A stretch of 63,934 bases of DNA, filler included, from Choristocarpus tenellus KU-1152 (taxonomy: Eukaryota; Protista; Phaeophyceae): NCBI GenBank assembly GCA_964200185.2. It is 8 parts of 8 records of this genome, joined end to end, with 100 filler letters (N's around TTAATTAATTAA, not from the genome) between each part and the next. Parts side by side here need not be neighbours in the genome. Positions count along the whole stretch, not along the records: positions 50,592 to 63,934 come from CAXNAD020001516.1; 7 more parts are not named here. The stretch is one strand, 5' to 3'. Of the stretch, positions 53,634 through 63,934 are shown piece after piece (the stretch's first letter is position 1; the number at the start of each line of letters is the position of its first letter). A program made the position numbers and the translations under genes. The notes beneath the pieces were generated by a model. It was not told where the DNA came from, ran no database searches, and saw nothing but the letters and a program-made list of their open reading frames with translations.

Positions 53634-55027
53634 CAGGGTGGTCCATCTTCGGAAGAGCAGAGTATGAGCCCTGGTCCTGATCCTAACCTAACCCACAAAT
53701 ACATGTATTGTGTAGGAATGTCCTGCCATTGTACCCTGGGCTCTGTGTGATTCAATGCAACAGATGCATTTCTTGAACTTTTTTTTCATTTTTTCCCCCA
53801 CCCTTTGTTTTAGGTCACCTCTGAATTTTAATGCCATTGTTCCGTAAGAGGGTTCATTCTTTTTCATGAGCATTATGACCCCCTTTTCCTCACCACATGG
53901 CAAGATTTAGCTCAAAAACAGTTGAAACGGAGGCATTTTGTTCCTATATAAATTTAGAGGCTATAATCCATGTTTCCATTGGCAAGAAAGGCACCATTGT
54001 TGTTTCTAGTAAGAACGAACCTTCTACCAACAGTGCTAATCTAATGTTCACCTCCCCCAAGGTTACCCTTGTATTCTTGCAACTGTGCTCTCTATTCCAG
54101 TTTGATACACTGGTGACCTAGACGCCTCGTTGTGTACTTTTTCTTTCTTAAGCGATACATGCAACCTGCCAGACAAAGCACCCTTTCCTAATATATATTT
54201 GTGAGACATAAAGATGCTATCAGCACAAGAATTGGGTGTCAAAACCTGTCAATAGTGAAGTGGGCGAGAGAGCTTGAGATTTCCATCTCGCCGTTGAAAA
54301 TTAAGGTACTTGAGGTCGAAGTATGCCCCTCAAAGGTTTCCATGCTGCTGAAGGCTTGTTTCTGTCGAAGCTAGAGAAAAATATATATATTTAAAGCTCT
54401 TGTACGCACAGAGTGTTTAGGGGTGTTCCAAGCGCAGTGACAATTTTCGAACAGTGCTGTGGATTTCTTCTGCTTCCTCTGCCTTACCCTTGCTTTCGAG
54501 GGGTGCTTCAGTCGTTACACATGCAGACAGTGTTGTGTCAAAATTTAGTGACGTAAGGTCTTCCTCTTTGGAAAAAAGATACACCACTTTTGGTTGGTTA
54601 GGGTTAGGGTTATAGGTTTGGCTGCATATATATATATACATATATGCATGGAACATAAAAAATAAAAAATAAAAAACTTGACTGCCTTGGAGGGATGAAT
54701 TGGCTCCTAGACGGGTGGAGGTTTCCCTCTGTTTGTTGACGCACTTGTAGTTACGACCTAGAATCAATGCCAAGAGTACAACCCTTGCTCCTTTTCCTAA
54801 GATATCCGAAAGCCTCAGCAGCATGCTCTGACCTCACAGGGTGACAAATCTCGTGCGACTGTATTGTATTATTGTATTATTGTACCTAGATCTACTCGGA
54901 ATGTTTGAGACCCGGATGGGTGGATGGGGAACAATGTAGAGAGAGGTCTGTTCTTGTATTATGGCAATGTGTGTCTGCAGAACACTTGTTTGGTATGGGC
55001 GTTTCTTCTGGGTATTGTACTATTTTG

Positions 55028-55050
55028 AGGGTTAGGGTTAGGGTTAGGGT
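55028..55050 (+). repeat. Interstitial (TTAGGG)n; shorter tracts at ~11083-11098 and ~54598-54611
   Basis: agggttagggttagggttagggtt. Confidence 0.85.
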
Positions 55051-55922
55051 TTTATGTGGAGTGTCGAGGTCATTTGTAAGCAAGAGGAGGTTCGACTTTG
55101 GCCTCCTGTTTTTTGCGACATCTTTGATCCTTGCGGAATATATATACCCAGTCTAAACGTGTTAAAATCGTCTTTTTCGTATATTTACTGTGTCTAGCAA
55201 AAAATAAACAAAGAAAAATTGTGTGGTCATACCCAGTCTTTCAGGTGTATAGTGTGGAATGCCCCACAAATAGTGCAAGTACGATTTGTTCTTGAAGCTC
55301 AAGATGCTCCCTTCTTTCACCCCATCTCTGGACTCCAACAGTGAGAAGTGTCAAACGCTCTAAAGCGTTGAGAGCAGCTGCAAGGACTAATCAACATTGA
55401 GAACCTCGAGTCAGTTGATGTAACATTGTTCTCTGAAGAAATATGTAAGTCCCGAAAGAGGAAATCCTAAACACTCCTTTTGAGCTAGACAGTTCTCGAT
55501 TGATGGGGACTACATGCCCTCATCCTACGGCATAGCTTCAGCCCCTCAATGTCAAGTACCTTTCGCTAAAGGATATAAATTGAAGCCTAGATGTAATAAT
55601 AGTCTCCATAAGCCCTAACCAGGGTCAGGTCCTCTTGGGGTCAGGAGAAATGCAAACATTAATATTAATAATCATTTTCCTAGCAGAAAGCTTGCTCGGC
55701 TCCTTGTGTTTTTATATCACCACCTCCTCTTGCTTTAGGTGGAAAATCTCACAACGGTCACACCTCAAGCCTACAATGCTGCTGTATCATGCTCCAGAGT
55801 GCAACATTAAAGAATAGAGCAATATATCTTACTAGAAAAAATATAATCTCAAACAAAGCCAGTGCAATATTCTTGACCCCTTCTTGCTCAATGCAGGGGA
55901 ACTCACGCTCGTTTGGTCATAC

Positions 55923-58772: not shown

Positions 58773-61180
58773 AGATTGCACTCTAGTTACTTCACAGTAA
58801 TGTGATGTCGTCCTCATTTCAAACCCACCCATAAAGCATCACACGGTATCCTCTCTTCTTTGCATTTTCCTTCAAAATCAACATGAAACCGTTGTTCTGG
58901 ATTATCAATCCAACAACGACCGACAACTCGACAGGTGAATTCATCATACATATATAGTGGTAGTGTGGCCATTATATCAGATAGAGATAGATACTGTCGT
59001 GAAATCAGCAAGGTGATGACAGCATTCTTCGCTAAGTAACACGAATGAAAGCACTCGATCAACTTTTCTAATTGAGTTGGGATTTCGCCCTGTGTAGGTT
59101 ATCAGAGAGAGGAAATTTTTTATCCACCACACATAGGAAAGACAACCTTAAAGGGAAAAGGATTCTTGCCACCTTTGATCGCCTGGCCATAGTAGTACTA
59201 CTGTGGGGTCCATACTATGAAGCTGTTGCCGTCAACTGTGCAGAGATACGGCATCTAGCTATACTTATGGTAGCTCTCACAGTAGTACCTTCCCTGCTGA
59301 GCTGCTCGGGCGGTCTCTCCTTTGCAGACGATGCTCGACAACCCACACTGTGAAGGGGGAGGCCTTCGGGTTGCTTCCTTTTCGAAATGATGCTGTCTAG
59401 TTGGCAACCTCTTGTGCTGAGGAAAGGAGAGGACTTTTGTCGGCGATTGGGGACAGAAGGAGTGAATGTAAAAGGAGGAAGATCTTTCCCAACAGAGGGA
59501 AATAGGACATAGGTTCCAGGTTATGTTTCTTGTGAAGAAAGGTTGGGAGGAGTAACTTCCTTTCCGAGCAAGGTATGTGTTTGAAGTTATAGCGGTCACG
59601 CCTCCCCTGCATTGACTATTCGTACCCAGATCATAGACTCCCTGTCCTCTTCCGAGGAATTGTTCCTACGGAGACATGAATACTGACACCCAAGACAAAG
59701 ACAGTGGCGCTTGGAGAAGGTGTGACAAGGACTGACAGCAACTCTTGATATGAAGTGGATAAGAAGAAGATCAGCAACACGTCAACCAGAAAAGTTCAGA
59801 ATCGGCCAAAAATTGCCCTTGAGCGTATCTTTCTCCTTTTTTTTGTATCACAGCGACCATCTTGGAGCTCAGTGGATCACATCCGCAAGATGGGCCCTAG
59901 TCATCTCCAGTCAGAAGTCGACCTTAACGTCTACCTAGTACTTGTGAATGCGAGGAAGCCATTTGGGGTCCCCATGTTGTTTCTTGCAGACTCCCTAGTC
60001 ATGGCTCCGGAACTGAATCACATACTGTGGAGCCTCCAGCATCAAACTCAAGGATGGGGACGCTGACTTGGACTCTGGAACGAGAATGCACTGGAATATG
60101 AGCCTAATATGCCAAAGGTATGTCTTACGAAATAAAAACCATGTCGCCTGATGCTTCAAATGGTGCATGGACTCACATTCCTCAATGAGGACGAATATTG
60201 AGTTCAACAACAAGAATGAGACTATTGGGTATCTTAGTGTAACCTCTAGAGTAGTCATCACCTTTGTGTACATGGGAAATACTACACCATCTACACTTGC
60301 AATAAAGCAATCATTTCTCTGTTGTTTTTGTAGGTCAGGGTTAAGGTTAGCTGTTGTGTGCATGGTTTGACCTGCACTCTGGAACACAGAAACCACTATC
60401 TAGTATTATACTCAGCAATAATAATATAAACAAATGGAGTATATGTGTTATAAAGCGAGTTGAACAACAAGTATTCCCAACAAATAAATATCACTAAACC
60501 TTAACCGTATTTGAACCAGTAGGCCCAAATATATGTAGTACTTGAGCCAGATGTTCAATTTGAGTGCATGCAGCAGCATCTCAAATAATCAACAATAACA
60601 ACGTCCATCTTAGCCCAGTGGCTCTCCAGAAGCAGGTAGGGTTAGAGTGAAATTAAGGAGGTAGGATATTATCCCCAGAGCAACAATTGGTTCGGTGAAA
60701 TGTTGCAATCAAACCATCACTTTAGTGTGATGTAAATGGACCCCTCAATAAGGTTGTCCAGTAATATACCTTGTCACAGTTTGGGAAGAAATAATAAAAT
60801 AATATAATCAATAAGAAGAAAAAAATAGAACTTTACAACTACTGCTACTGCTACCACATATATAGTAACAAATAGACTAATAATCACGGCCAGCAAGTGA
60901 ATTTTGATTTGGTGGGAGGCCTGTATAGTTCTGTAAGTATGTAGGACTTGGATTACAACTTGTTGCTGGCTTGATTTTGTGAAATGAGTACTTGAGCTAT
61001 CTAAAATGCACTGTGCACGTAGTCCTTGTGAGGTTTGTGGAGACTCCAATTTCGTGGCAGAATTTGCTTAACAGGGGTCAAACTATAGCCGGTGAATTGA
61101 TAAATGGAGTACTTAGACCGAGACCCGCTCAGCACTACAACTGCAGCAACATACTTCATGCTTCTAGCTCAGGTGGGGGG

Positions 61181-61204
61181 TTAGGGTTAGGGTTAGGGTT
61201 AGGG
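61181..61204 (+). repeat. (TTAGGG)4 tract abutting the bacterial pseudogene
   Basis: ggggggg-ttagggttagggttagggttaggg-tactttttctgag. Confidence 0.95.
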
Positions 61205-61675
61205 TACTTTTTCTGAGTCGCAATCAGTATCCAACGTTTGCGCTTTATCCAACCTTTTGCTAGATTAATTGGTTTTGCTACAGCTTGGATGGCTTCATTT
61301 TTTAATGCATCCATCATTATACACACGGTCTATAATGTAGTTTTTCTAGCAAGAGTGCATTGATAGTTTCTGTCCGGATCCAATTTTGATGGAACTTTTT
61401 GTAGAGAAGCTAAAAGGGCTGCTTCATTTGAAGTAAGCTCTTCAAACCAACTTTAAAGAATGATTAAAAGCAGCTGATGCAACTCCATAGTCATCTTATA
61501 CAAGATAAATTTGATCTAGATAGAGTTCTAATATTTCTTCCATAAATTTTTGAGTAACCATGTAAGACTGGATTGCTTCAGAAATTTCCTATCTAAAGAT
61601 CTTTCAGAAGAAAACAAAAAATCTTACAACTTTCTAAGTAGCTGTTGATCCGCCTTCTACACGTTGCTTATTAAT
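61205..61675 (-). pseudogene. mrcA: Decayed bacterial penicillin-binding protein 1A, transglycosylase-domain fragment (Rickettsiales-like)
   Basis: Minus-strand translation through 2 stops and about 6 frameshifts: QRVEGGSTAT*KVV/DFLFSSERSLDRK/ISEAIQSYMVTQKFMEEILELYLDQIYLV*DDYGVASAAFNHSLKLV/EELTSNEAALLASLQKVPSKLDPDRNYQCTLARK/NYIIDRVYNDGCIK/NEAIQAVAKPINLAK/DKAQTLDTDCDSEKV. GT51 motifs (GGSTITQQ, RKxxE, ILELYLNxIY, YGVxAA, EAALLAxLPKAPS) are in the correct order. The region is intronless and AT-rich. Confidence 0.85.
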
Positions 61676-61711
61676 TGGTGTAGAGGAGTGCAGCTTCATT
61701 GCACAAATAAT

Positions 61712-61969
61712 GAGCCGAAGTATCTTAGAGGGTAGGGCCCCGTCCATTTGGGGGTCAAAATTCAATGTTGTGATTTTGATGTAATTTTGGCTATCGTGCT
61801 TGTTAGGAAGTGTCAATATCCTTGTTCTGGACACACCTTTTCACATTGTATCTATTTTACCTACTCGGAAGCATTTTGGAGTAGAAAAACGTCGTAAAAA
61901 ACGTATGGGAAGCCAAGCCCTAAATGGACAAACAGGGCAAAACTCGTACCCCCTCAGATACTTTCACTC
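61712..61969 (+). mobile_element. MITE family B copy 1 (258 bp)
   Basis: GAGCCGAAGTATCTTAGAGGG...CCCTCAGATACTTTCACTC termini, with an inner GTCCATTT/AAATGGAC inverted pair; colinear with 62190-62448. Confidence 0.8.
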
Positions 61970-62189
61970 AATACAGACACGTCTGTGAAATGGATGCGCA
62001 TAGACACCTCTTGAGTTGTAGGCATAGACACTCTACACAAGATCTTTGTTCGGTTCATTTTATAGTGGAGTGAAGTTCATTTCTGTTACCACAACTTGTC
62101 GTGTACGTCATACATCTGTACAAGCACTCATCTACCCCAAGCCCAAATTGACCAGCCCATCATGTGAATCTGAGAAAATAGCAATGAAA

Positions 62190-62448
62190 GAGTCAAAGTA
62201 TCTTAGAGGGTAGGGCCGCGTCCGTTTGGCGACCAAAATCCAATGTTGAAATTTTGATGTAATTTTGGCAATCATGTTTGTTAGGAAGTGCCAATATCCT
62301 TTTTCCAGGCACACCTTTTCATAACATACACATTTTGCCTACTCCGAAACATTTTGGAGTAGGAAATATGTCGTAAGAAACCCGTGGGAGTCCAAGCCCT
62401 AAATGGACAGACAGGGCAAAGCTCATACCCTCTAAAGTACTTTCACTC
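62190..62448 (+). mobile_element. MITE family B copy 2 (259 bp)
   Basis: GAGTCAAAGTATCTTAGAGGG...CCCTCTAAAGTACTTTCACTC; colinear with copy 1. Confidence 0.8.
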
Positions 62449-63715
62449 ATTATTGAACTGGGGTGGAGGTGTGAGAGGGGTGAAAGAAAAAAATAAAAAT
62501 AGAAAAAAGAAGAGGTGCAGAATTTAGCAACCCGTGTTTCTGGAGGTATTGTTGAACTGAAGTCATTGATATCTTGAAGAAAGGTACACTGGCTCTTTGT
62601 CTCACTCCTGCATCATGTGACCCTCCCTCCAAAGCCAGAGAGTATATACCCATGAGCAAGCCTGAGCTTGAAGATTTGTAGACCAGCGAAAAAAACTTGA
62701 TTCCAGTCCTTCGAGATCAATATCACCTCAATATATTCACTCAATGGACACAAGAATGCATTTACACACCCAGGTTGGGGTTCTTAAAGTGCACCCATCC
62801 TACAAACGTCAATTAACAAACATAAACATACTCTAACACACTAAAGTGCGCACGACCACATATATGTGTTTTTTAATCCTTCAGGCCATCCCAGGGTAGA
62901 GTCTTTGACAGAATGAACCATCTACAAGTTGGAATGTCGTTTGCAGCCTTCTAATACACTAACAGCATGCAGTTCACACCACCAATAGAAACCTACTGCA
63001 TGACACACATCAACCACTCACAGTTAATGTCTCCATTCCCCCTTTGGCTACTGTGTTGACCGCTCTCCTATCTGGAACACTTGTGCTCAAATCAACCTTG
63101 AAATACATAACATTTTTTCTTCACACGGAAATCTATGATGGCACAGAGCATACGATGGATCCTGCCACAACATAAGGGGTCAAGCAGGGACTTGAGTGAA
63201 TCTGATACCTGCGAAGGGCAGGTTAGATGCCCAGGTTAGCTTGTCTGCCCCCCACACTTAACAAGATTCAAAGCACACTGCTCTGCACTGTGACTGTTTC
63301 ATGTTGACTGGGTCAGAACCTGCCAACTTAATCATGGTCACGCCATTGTGGTTATGCACGATAGCTACAAACACAGCAATGGTGTATCAATCAATAGAAT
63401 AGTGAAGTCCCCCCATATTCCCCCTCACTTTATTGTGGAGCCACACGCTAGACACACACACAATACATATATACATGTACACACCCTCTGCTACTATACT
63501 CAAAGTCACCACACAATTCAATATTAACTGTCACAAAGCACTGAAAGAAGGGCTCATATCCCTAAACCTAATATTCCACTACACCCTCGGTTACCAAGAA
63601 GAAGTTCAATTAGGTTTGGGTGCCCGATTTTTCCAGAGGGTAGTCGCTTTATCTCTCTGATGCGTAGGATGAACACTCAATGATTTTGTGGACCCATGTT
63701 TTCTCCATGCGATTT

Positions 63716-63822: not shown

Positions 63823-63934
63823 CTGTGCCTAACGTCAGTGCACCGTGAGACATCGCGATTTGGATGGGGGGGGGGGGGGGGGGGGGGGCTGCAGGGGGGG
63901 GGGGGGGGGGAGGGAGGGGGGGGGTGGGGGGGGG

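What the first reader, a model, noticed from the sequence alone, without database searches (positions are those of the whole stretch)
61205..61675. Fossil Rickettsiales-like peptidoglycan gene (PBP1A/mrcA) inside an algal nuclear contig
Seen: about 470 bp of AT-rich, intronless DNA reads through stops and frameshifts as a class A PBP transglycosylase domain with its motifs in order. It lies on a contig with spliceosomal genes and is 36 bp from a host MITE. Known: class A PBPs are bacterial peptidoglycan synthases, and stramenopiles are not known to build peptidoglycan. The EAIxSYM, PxRNY, NDGxI and DKxxTxDxD segments resemble Rickettsiaceae PBP1A as I recall it, and Rickettsiaceae such as Ca. 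Megaira infect algae. Inference: this is an old endosymbiont-to-nucleus transfer, recording a past intracellular infection. The heavy decay argues against a live contaminant.
Basis: partly seen in the sequence, partly recalled or inferred. Interest (0 to 1): 0.9.

Follow-up and report, generated by a model that had tools for sequence, protein, structure and literature searches.

The report
Dead Megaira-type PBP1A gene fragment
About 0.5 kb of a peptidoglycan-synthase gene (PBP1A) from a Megaira-group Rickettsiaceae bacterium lies broken and non-functional between host repeats in a eukaryotic contig. It is a genomic fossil of a past intracellular infection, and this kind of relic has been described before.

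Summary
The minus strand of 61204-61674 (perhaps to 61707) reads as codons ~104-262 (perhaps from ~89) of a class A penicillin-binding protein. This covers the second to fifth transglycosylase motifs and the linker. It is broken by 2 in-frame stops and about 6 frame changes (8 indel events).

The donor guess is also confirmed and can be narrowed.
- The fragment is 77-78% identical in DNA to intact PBP1A genes on two AT-rich bacterial contigs (blastn E = 4e-106 and 1e-96). It is 65-67% identical to other relatives.
- The named proteins in that clade are Rickettsiaceae MAGs, Ca. Megaira venefica and the Megaira endosymbiont of the brown alga Nemacystus.
- Generic alphaproteobacterial PBP1A proteins reach only 37-45% amino-acid identity.
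- The protein tree (100/91) and the DNA tree (97/98) both place the fragment inside this group.

Independent Logan contigs from two samples carry the fragment at about the depth of the single-copy flanks. They run from it into a very abundant host MITE on one side and into a TTAGGG run on the other. A live contaminant is therefore excluded.

Two points remain open. The join across the TTAGGG run was not bridged.

Rickettsial DNA in an algal nucleus is already known from Volvox carteri. This is a new member of a known kind, of modest interest.

The parts
61204..61674 (-). Pseudogene fragment of a class A PBP (PBP1A/mrcA), codons ~104-262 of a ~780-codon gene. It holds transglycosylase motifs 2-5 and the linker up to the '..YxEKV' motif.
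   Evidence: blastn to L074: 78.3% over 480 columns, E = 4e-106; to L077: 76.9%, E = 1e-96. DNA alignment. Pfam Transgly pieces. Frameshift-aware alignment.
61675..61707 (-). Possible further, more decayed PBP1A sequence (codons ~89-103) between the clear homology and the MITE.
   Evidence: The frameshift-aware protein alignment extends weakly to 61711-61723. The DNA alignment does not. Uncertain.
61634..61636 (-). In-frame stop (TAG) at the first Q of the GGSTITQQ motif.
   Evidence: CAG in L074, TAG here.
61496..61498 (-). In-frame stop (TAA) within the IYLGxGAYG motif.
61178..61206 (+). Interstitial telomere-type run, GGG(TTAGGG)4TA, abutting the truncated 3' end of the PBP fragment. One C is shared at the join.
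   Evidence: The donor sequence continues GAGAAGAA where the window continues CCTAACCC.
61708..61973 (.). Host MITE-like element, copy 1, with 27-nt terminal inverted repeats.
   Evidence: TIR 78% complementary. (summed depth ~0.5-1.2 million against ~17 for unique flanks; also present in organism B).
62182..62452 (.). Host MITE-like element, copy 2 (82-83% identical to copy 1).

Best explanation
This is a non-functional relic of bacterial DNA in a eukaryotic nuclear chromosome. A piece of the PBP1A (mrcA) gene of an intracellular Megaira-group Rickettsiaceae bacterium entered the host nucleus and was ligated into a chromosome break. The donor was closely related to the bacteria represented by contigs L074 and L077. 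The piece carries no start codon, no first catalytic motif and no transpeptidase domain, so it was dead on arrival. It has since drifted neutrally, accumulating 2 stops and about 8 indels. It does nothing now and is a marker that this host lineage once carried such a symbiont.

Shown: the identity of the gene, the donor clade, the decay, and the linkage to host repeats at single-copy depth in two samples.

Inferred: the route (symbiont lysis, then end-joining at a double-strand break). Also inferred is that the telomere-type run at one edge was captured in the same repair event, and that the transfer happened millions of years ago.
For: **Gene identity.** Pfam Transgly pieces are colinear. The frameshift-aware score is 396 against at most 55 for shuffles. 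The read-through gives blastp E = 2e-51.

**Donor.**
- An unbiased metagenome scan gave three AT-rich loci far ahead of 67 others (130-135 bits against at most 107).
- Their named relatives are Rickettsiaceae MAGs, Ca. Megaira venefica, the Ca. Megaira endosymbiont of Nemacystus and Ca. Trichorickettsia.
- The best protein, P0151, is 66% identical over 148 non-X columns, against 37-45% for 120 other alphaproteobacterial PBP1A proteins.
- DNA identity is 78% to L074 and 77% to L077, against 65-67% to L075, L078 and L007.
- The protein tree places it inside a 44-row set that holds both named Megaira sequences, with support 100/91. The Rickettsiaceae-type clade separates from the rest at 100/96.
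- The DNA tree groups it with L074 and L077 at 97/98.

**Neutral decay.** Differences from L074 by codon position are 19%, 13% and 28%. A live bacterial pair shows 14.5%, 5% and 46.5%. The terminal branch is 0.32, against 0.02-0.07 for the relatives.

**Integration.**
- Logan contigs of two samples (562 nt at depth 26.5; 555 nt at depth 6.8) cover 61215-61740. They continue into the TTAGGG run on one side and about 30 nt into the MITE on the other.
- Flank depths are 14.6-16.8 and 5.5-8.6.
- One SNP inside the fragment (61553) differs between samples.
- No other bacterial-like sequence lies in the 13-kb piece.

**Precedents.** About 9 kb of rickettsial gene-like sequence lies in the Volvox carteri nuclear genome (PMC4324946). 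Megaira-group symbionts occur in stramenopile algae (PMC10132079; bioRxiv 10.64898/2026.03.27.714854).
Against: - The independent contigs from both sides stop inside the G-rich TTAGGG run. The join between the fragment and the left flank therefore rests on the window's own short-read assembly. The piece ends in a poly-G artefact.
- On protein data the AU test does not reject a position just outside the 70 sampled Rickettsiaceae-type sequences (p = 0.209).
- The reference set was gathered by similarity to the fragment's best hit. It lacks Rickettsia proper and most other phyla.
- The host organism is unknown to me.
Confidence: 0.85

Rival explanations
1. Assembly chimera. The fragment is a pseudogene in the genome of a live symbiont or contaminant bacterium present in the sample. 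It was joined to host repeats by the assembler.
For: The contigs break in the TTAGGG run in both samples. The assembly is short-read based and ends in poly-G. Rickettsiaceae genomes do carry pseudogenes (a split PBP occurs in a relative).
Against: Two independent Logan assemblies of different samples give the same ~560-nt contig. It starts in TTAGGG repeats and ends about 30 nt inside the host MITE. Neither feature belongs in a Rickettsiaceae genome. Depth matches the unique host flanks in both samples. There is no neighbouring bacterial gene: miaB lies upstream of PBP1A in all four relatives whose neighbours were examined (L074-L078), but it is absent here. Substitutions are spread over all codon positions.
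Confidence: 0.05
2. The fragment is host-integrated but belongs to a mobile or duplicated host sequence. A transposon or segmental duplication captured it, so it is present in several copies and its present neighbourhood says nothing about the original insertion.
For: In X1 the depth of the fragment contig is about 1.6 times the flanks (26.5 against 16.8 and 14.6). It lies directly beside an extremely abundant MITE and a telomere-type run.
Against: In X2 the depth equals the flanks (6.8 against 5.5-8.6). Only one contig per sample covers it, with 0-1 differences. No second copy lies in the 13-kb piece.
Confidence: 0.07
3. The donor was some other AT-rich bacterium (for example Pelagibacterales, Holosporales or a non-alphaproteobacterial symbiont). 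The Rickettsiaceae affinity would then be a sampling artefact.
For: The transglycosylase domain is conserved across bacteria. The reference panel is biased, and the AU test is not decisive. A signature scan of 185,579 species genomes found only two PBP matches, neither close.
Against: DNA identity of 77-78% with E = 1e-96 to 4e-106 to two contigs whose PBP1A sits within the clade of named Megaira/Rickettsiaceae sequences. Other AT-rich metagenome loci (GC 0.25-0.31: L022, L010, L049, L044) score only 90-100 bits, against 130-169.
Confidence: 0.03

Closest known systems
Rickettsial (Megaira-type) gene-like sequences in the Volvox carteri nuclear genome (Kawafune et al. 2015, PMC4324946)
   Same: DNA of a Megaira-group Rickettsiaceae endosymbiont is integrated in an algal nuclear chromosome. 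It consists of truncated peptidoglycan and cell-division genes (murB, ddlB, ftsQ) and a 16S fragment, interleaved with host-specific multicopy repeats and a transposon. The authors read it as a trace of a past infection.
   Different: Here there is a single ~0.5-kb piece of a different gene (PBP1A). It is much more decayed: the Volvox murB and ddlB copies had no frameshift or premature stop. The host uses TTAGGG-type repeats, so it is not a volvocine alga. A telomere-type run lies at one junction.
Nuclear Wolbachia transfers (nuwts) in insects and filarial nematodes, used as 'ghosts' of lost symbionts (e.g. PMC12693587)
   Same: Rickettsiales DNA is inserted into host chromosomes, is mostly non-functional and decays neutrally. 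It is informative about former infections.
   Different: The donor family and the host group differ. Nuwts are often many and large, whereas only one small piece is visible here.
Class A penicillin-binding protein PBP1A of Megaira-group Rickettsiaceae (Pfam PF00912 + PF17092 + PF00905; NCBIfam TIGR02074)
   Same: Colinear with residues ~104-262 (perhaps from ~89) of the 778-aa protein P0151, with 63-66% amino-acid and 78-80% DNA identity. It shares the lineage motifs EAILSYM, PERNY and DKVQTLDAD.
   Different: Only a fifth of the gene is present. There is no start codon, no EDxxFxxHxG motif, no OB-like domain and no transpeptidase domain. It has 2 stops and about 6 frame changes. It is a relic of the gene, not a member of the enzyme family in any functional sense.

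Membership tests
GT51 transglycosylase domain of class A PBPs (Pfam PF00912) | Motif 1, EDxxFxxHxG, carrying the first catalytic Glu | tested here: not met
   The fragment starts after it. P0151 has AAEDKNFYTHAG at residues ~74-85. The alignment begins at residue 89-104.
GT51 transglycosylase domain of class A PBPs (Pfam PF00912) | Motifs 2-5 in order (GGSTITQQ; RKxxE; KxxILExYLN; RRxxVL-type) | tested here: met
   GGSTAT*, SLDRK.SEA, EEILELYLDQ and ARK.NYIIDR are present in order. Pfam pieces match profile positions 89-117 and 137-170.
GT51 transglycosylase domain of class A PBPs (Pfam PF00912) | Intact reading frame able to encode an enzyme | tested here: not met
   2 in-frame stops and 8 indel events in ~470 nt.
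Bifunctional PBP1A (rather than monofunctional MtgA, PBP1B or PBP1C) | Sequence continues past the TG domain into the PBP1A linker, and the closest relatives are full-length PBP1A | tested here: met
   The alignment runs to residue 262, 'DKVQTLDADYYAEKV', beyond the TG domain. The L005-type relative scores 592.7 bits on TIGR02074 PBP_1a_fam, above its cutoff of 508.75. The window's short pieces alone cannot separate the subfamilies.
Bifunctional PBP1A (rather than monofunctional MtgA, PBP1B or PBP1C) | Transpeptidase domain (PF00905) present | tested here: not met
   tblastn of full-length P0151 and P0148 against the 13-kb piece finds nothing beyond residue 262. The fragment is cut off by the TTAGGG run.
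Megaira-group Rickettsiaceae origin | Closest sequences are Rickettsiaceae, and the fragment nests among them in trees | tested here: met
   100/91 in the protein tree, 97/98 in the DNA tree, 77-78% DNA identity. Caveat: the AU test gives p = 0.209 for a position just outside the sampled set.
Megaira-group Rickettsiaceae origin | Genome-level taxonomy of the two closest bacterial contigs (L074, L077) | not testable with these tools
Bacterium-to-nucleus transfer (nuwt-like integrant) | Physical linkage to host DNA on both sides, confirmed independently of the assembly | tested here: inconclusive
   The right side is met: Logan contigs of two samples run from the fragment about 30 nt into the host MITE. 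On the left side the contigs from both directions end inside the TTAGGG run, and none bridges it.
Bacterium-to-nucleus transfer (nuwt-like integrant) | Read depth like nuclear single-copy sequence | tested here: met
   26.5 against 14.6-16.8 in X1; 6.8 against 5.5-8.6 in X2. These are k-mer depths of contigs, not raw reads.
Bacterium-to-nucleus transfer (nuwt-like integrant) | Flanking DNA is eukaryotic nuclear | tested here: met
   No ORF with a significant Pfam hit in 13 kb. A MITE at a summed depth tens of thousands of times that of the unique flanks. Four TTAGGG-type runs. The host species is unknown.

The most novel reading that the evidence does not exclude
The fragment may be one visible piece of a larger, so far undescribed wave of Megaira-group DNA transfer into this host lineage. 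If the host is a stramenopile alga, this would be the first documented Rickettsiaceae-to-nucleus transfer in that group. The exact abutment of the truncated gene to a short TTAGGG run, with 1 nt of overlap, would record a double-strand break patched by both telomerase-type repeat addition and capture of symbiont DNA.
Probability: 0.2. Interest if true: 0.55.

Novelty: new member of a known kind. Interest (0 to 1): 0.35.

Why it matters
The fragment is a datable molecular fossil. It shows that this host lineage once carried, or was invaded by, a Megaira-group Rickettsiaceae bacterium. Such bacteria are common but poorly understood symbionts of algae, ciliates and other aquatic eukaryotes.

Relics like this can reveal past host ranges and the age of associations, as Wolbachia relics do in nematodes and insects. 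They also warn annotators not to mistake such pieces for contamination or for a host peptidoglycan pathway.

The fragment has no functional consequence for the host.

Tried and rejected
**Searches with the window's own pieces**
- An exhaustive HMMER search with the 40-aa stop-free piece gave one hit, a spurious tandem-repeat protein.
- The search for homologous proteins with the same piece found no candidate, because the tool only compares proteins of similar length to the query.
- NCBIfam on the pieces could not separate PBP1A, 1B, 1C and PbpC. PDB gave only weak hits to Aquifex PBP1A.

**Donor searches that added little**
- I built a signature pattern partly from my memory of a Rickettsia sequence (RNY-x4-AR-x-[DN]Y..[DE]R) and scanned 185,579 species genomes. 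It hit only one Rickettsiales MAG, one alphaproteobacterial MAG and a chance Bacteroides site, and no Rickettsia.
- A profile search seeded with those MAGs returned only Rhodospirillales-type PBP1A proteins at 37-45% identity.
- The AU test could not reject placing the fragment just outside the sampled Rickettsiaceae set (p = 0.209).

**Context checks that found nothing**
- Rfam and tRNA scans of the piece found nothing.
- Pfam on ten host ORFs gave nothing significant, so the host stays unidentified.
- There are no other bacterial-like segments and no further PBP parts anywhere in the 13-kb piece.
- Accession searches in the paper library (DRR496536, GCA_024449895, JAANSX) found nothing.

**Method note.** The read-through peptide was built only inside scripts, with X at each break. 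It was never typed into a database tool. A direct BLASTX-like search of the whole fragment was therefore not possible and was left out.

Full report
**1. What is in the sequence**

The minus strand of 61205-61680 translates in three frames to pieces that follow the order of a peptidoglycan glycosyltransferase (GT51) domain..NKQRVEGGSTAT*, FLFSSERSLDRK, SEAIQSYMVTQKFMEEILELYLDQIYLV*, DDYGVASAAFN, EELTSNEAALLASLQKVPSKLDPDRNYQCTLARK, NYIIDRVYNDGCI, AIQAVAKPINL and KRLDKAQTLDTDCDSEKV.

- The two longest stop-free pieces match Pfam Transgly at colinear profile positions, 89-117 and 137-170 of 178.
- I wrote a protein-to-DNA aligner that allows frameshifts. With the best reference found later (P0151) it scores 396, against 31-55 for twenty shuffles of the same DNA. 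It gives 106 identities in 169 aligned codons, from protein residue 89 to 262 and window 61723 to 61205.
- The fragment has GC 0.342, against 0.431 for the whole 13-kb piece.

**2. Finding relatives**

The tools refuse translations that contain stops, and the stop-free pieces are 40 aa or shorter. The direct searches therefore failed or were uninformative.

- A signature scan of the GTDB species genomes, designed partly from my memory of a Rickettsia sequence, returned only two PBP genes. One was from a 'Rickettsiales' MAG and one from an alphaproteobacterial MAG. Both were about 43% identical to the fragment.
- A profile search seeded with these gave 120 Rhodospirillales-type PBP1A proteins at 37-45% identity.
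- The useful step was a scan of JGI metagenome contigs. Its patterns came from the fragment's own 34-aa piece plus two of those proteins, and the fragment's piece served as the confirming sequence. Of 70 loci, three AT-rich ones (L005, L007, L008; GC 0.30-0.33) stood well clear: 130-135 bits, against at most 107 for all the others.
- I then searched the protein database with the full-length PBP1A of L005, restricted to residues 100-300. This returned 120 proteins. Those with organism names are 'Rickettsiaceae bacterium' MAGs, Candidatus Megaera (Megaira) venefica, 'Candidatus Megaira endosymbiont of Nemacystus', Candidatus Trichorickettsia mobilis and 'Rickettsiales bacterium'.

**3. Donor**

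I re-ranked all 240 proteins against an X-masked read-through of the fragment.

- The Rickettsiaceae-type set scores 105-169 bits (median 138). The general alphaproteobacterial set scores 82-110 bits (median 93).
- The best protein, P0151, is identical at 98 of 160 alignment columns, or 66% of the 148 columns that are not X.
- At the DNA level the fragment is 78.3% identical over 480 columns to the P0151 gene (L074, a Logan contig of run DRR496536), with E = 4e-106.
- It is 76.9% identical to the P0153 gene (L077, NCBI assembly GCA_024449895.1), with E = 1e-96.
- It is only 65-67% identical to three other members of the clade.
- Both close contigs are ordinary bacterial DNA with an intact 778-788-codon PBP1A preceded by a miaB-like gene. 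L074 also carries an ABC-2 permease gene and clpB upstream.

A maximum-likelihood protein tree used 109 rows, 160 columns and LG+C20+F+G4.

- It separates the Rickettsiaceae-type clade from all other sequences with support 100/96.
- It puts the fragment inside a 44-row subset with support 100/91.
- That subset contains Megaira venefica, the Nemacystus Megaira and seven 'Rickettsiaceae' MAGs. It excludes Trichorickettsia.
- A DNA tree of the eight available gene segments groups the fragment with L074 and L077 at 97/98.
- The AU test on the protein data does not reject a position just outside the 70 sampled sequences (p = 0.209). The nesting therefore rests mainly on the DNA result and the bootstrap support.

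**4. State of the gene**

Relative to L074 the fragment shows the following.

- Two in-frame stops: CAG to TAG in GGSTITQQ at 61634-36, and TAA at 61496-98.
- Eight indel events (15 nt) that change the frame about six times.
- Differences by codon position of 19%, 13% and 28%. Two live bacterial genes at similar overall distance show 14.5%, 5% and 46.5%.
- A terminal branch in the DNA tree of 0.32 substitutions per site, against 0.02-0.07 for its two relatives.

This is the pattern of neutral decay. A rough reading is that some 10-15% of sites changed after constraint was lost, and more if the corrected branch length is used. At common nuclear rates that means millions to tens of millions of years, but this is inference without a calibrated rate.

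Only about a fifth of the gene is present. Motif 1 with its catalytic glutamate, the start codon, the OB-like domain and the whole transpeptidase domain are missing. None of them lies elsewhere in the 13-kb piece.

**5. Context and integration**

The 3' end of the fragment (gene sense) stops after ..GAAAAAGTAC. The donor continues GAGAAGAA, whereas the window continues CCTAACCCTAA.., that is GGG(TTAGGG)4TA at 61178-61206 on the plus strand, sharing one C. Three further TTAGGG-type runs lie in the same orientation at 54589, 55023 and 60326.

On the other side, clear DNA homology ends at 61674. A 266-bp MITE-like element begins at 61708, with 27-nt terminal inverted repeats. A second copy lies 478 bp further on.

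I laid the Logan contigs of four public runs from one study on 59500-63500.

- In two samples of 'organism A' a separate contig covers 61215-61740 with 0-1 differences. It is 562 nt at k-mer depth 26.5 in one sample and 555 nt at depth 6.8 in the other.
- These contigs run 31-36 nt into the TTAGGG run on one side and about 30 nt into the MITE on the other.
- The unique flanks have depth 14.6-16.8 and 5.5-8.6.
- The MITE reaches summed depths of 0.5-1.2 million and also occurs in 'organism B'.
- One SNP inside the fragment (61553 A>C) distinguishes the samples.

The fragment is therefore inherited at about single-copy nuclear depth and is physically tied to host-type repeats in assemblies independent of the window. 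This excludes a live contaminant and makes a chimera unlikely.

One weakness remains. The contigs coming from the left flank and from the fragment both end inside the G-rich telomere-type run, and none bridges it. That join therefore rests on the window's own short-read assembly, whose end is a poly-G artefact.

**6. Host**

I could not identify it.

- The run names are coded.
- No ORF in the piece has a significant Pfam match.
- Rfam and tRNA scans are empty.

TTAGGG-type repeats, an extremely abundant MITE and the lack of long ORFs show eukaryotic nuclear DNA. From general knowledge, TTAGGG fits stramenopiles, but also animals and fungi. It does not fit volvocine green algae, land plants, ciliates or arthropods.

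The literature shows that Megaira-group bacteria do live in stramenopile algae: Nemacystus decipiens (PMC10132079), and Ectocarpus and the dictyochophyte Ciliophrys (bioRxiv 10.64898/2026.03.27.714854).

**7. Mechanism**

Most likely, DNA released from an intracellular Megaira-type bacterium reached the nucleus, and a random ~0.5-kb piece was ligated into a double-strand break by end joining. The short telomere-type run that abuts it exactly suggests capture or addition of telomeric repeats in the same repair. The MITE either was already there or inserted later and trimmed the other end. These steps are inferred. Only the end product is shown.

**8. Comparison and novelty**

The closest published case is the ~9-kb block of rickettsial 16S, murB, ddlB and ftsQ pieces in the Volvox carteri nuclear genome. 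It is interleaved with host multicopy elements and is read as a trace of an earlier Megaira-type infection (PMC4324946). Wolbachia relics in nematodes are used in the same way (PMC12693587).

The present case differs in three ways: the gene, its much heavier decay, and a host with TTAGGG repeats. It is a new member of a known kind. It does not bear on whether the host makes peptidoglycan.

I rate interest at 0.35. It would be somewhat higher if the host proves to be a stramenopile and if more fragments exist.

Noticed in passing
window 54589-54619, 55023-55053, 60326-60356, 61172-61206: Four interstitial telomere-type (TTAGGG)n runs within 7 kb, all in the same orientation on the + strand. This could mean a subtelomeric or formerly telomeric region.
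   Followed up: partly
window 61708-61973 and 62182-62452: A ~266-bp MITE-like element with 27-nt terminal inverted repeats. Two copies lie 478 bp apart. Summed contig depth is ~1e6 against ~17 for unique sequence, so tens of thousands of copies are likely. It is also present in a second, related organism of the same study.
   Followed up: partly
window 63855-63934: The piece ends in an 80-nt poly-G run with a few interruptions. This is typical of a two-colour Illumina artefact, so the end of the contig is not genome sequence.
   Followed up: no
L077 (NCBI GCA_024449895.1, contig JAANSX014500328.1) and L074 (Logan run DRR496536): The two bacterial contigs closest to the fragment come from a very fragmented NCBI assembly (the contig number is in the millions, so presumably a eukaryote host assembly carrying symbiont contigs) and from a DDBJ run. 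Their hosts may point to the natural host range of the donor lineage.
   Followed up: partly
P0243/P0244 (ENA contig of 56 kb, cluster of P0151): In one close relative the PBP1A is recorded as two products of 463 and 153 aa on the same contig. This could be a pseudogenised or frameshifted PBP1A in a live Megaira-type genome.
   Followed up: no
window 60426, 60974, 61553: Single-base differences between the window and the two public samples. 60974 A>G is seen in both samples. 60426 A>G and 61553 A>C are seen in X2 only. The window therefore comes from a slightly different individual or strain, and the locus is polymorphic.
   Followed up: no
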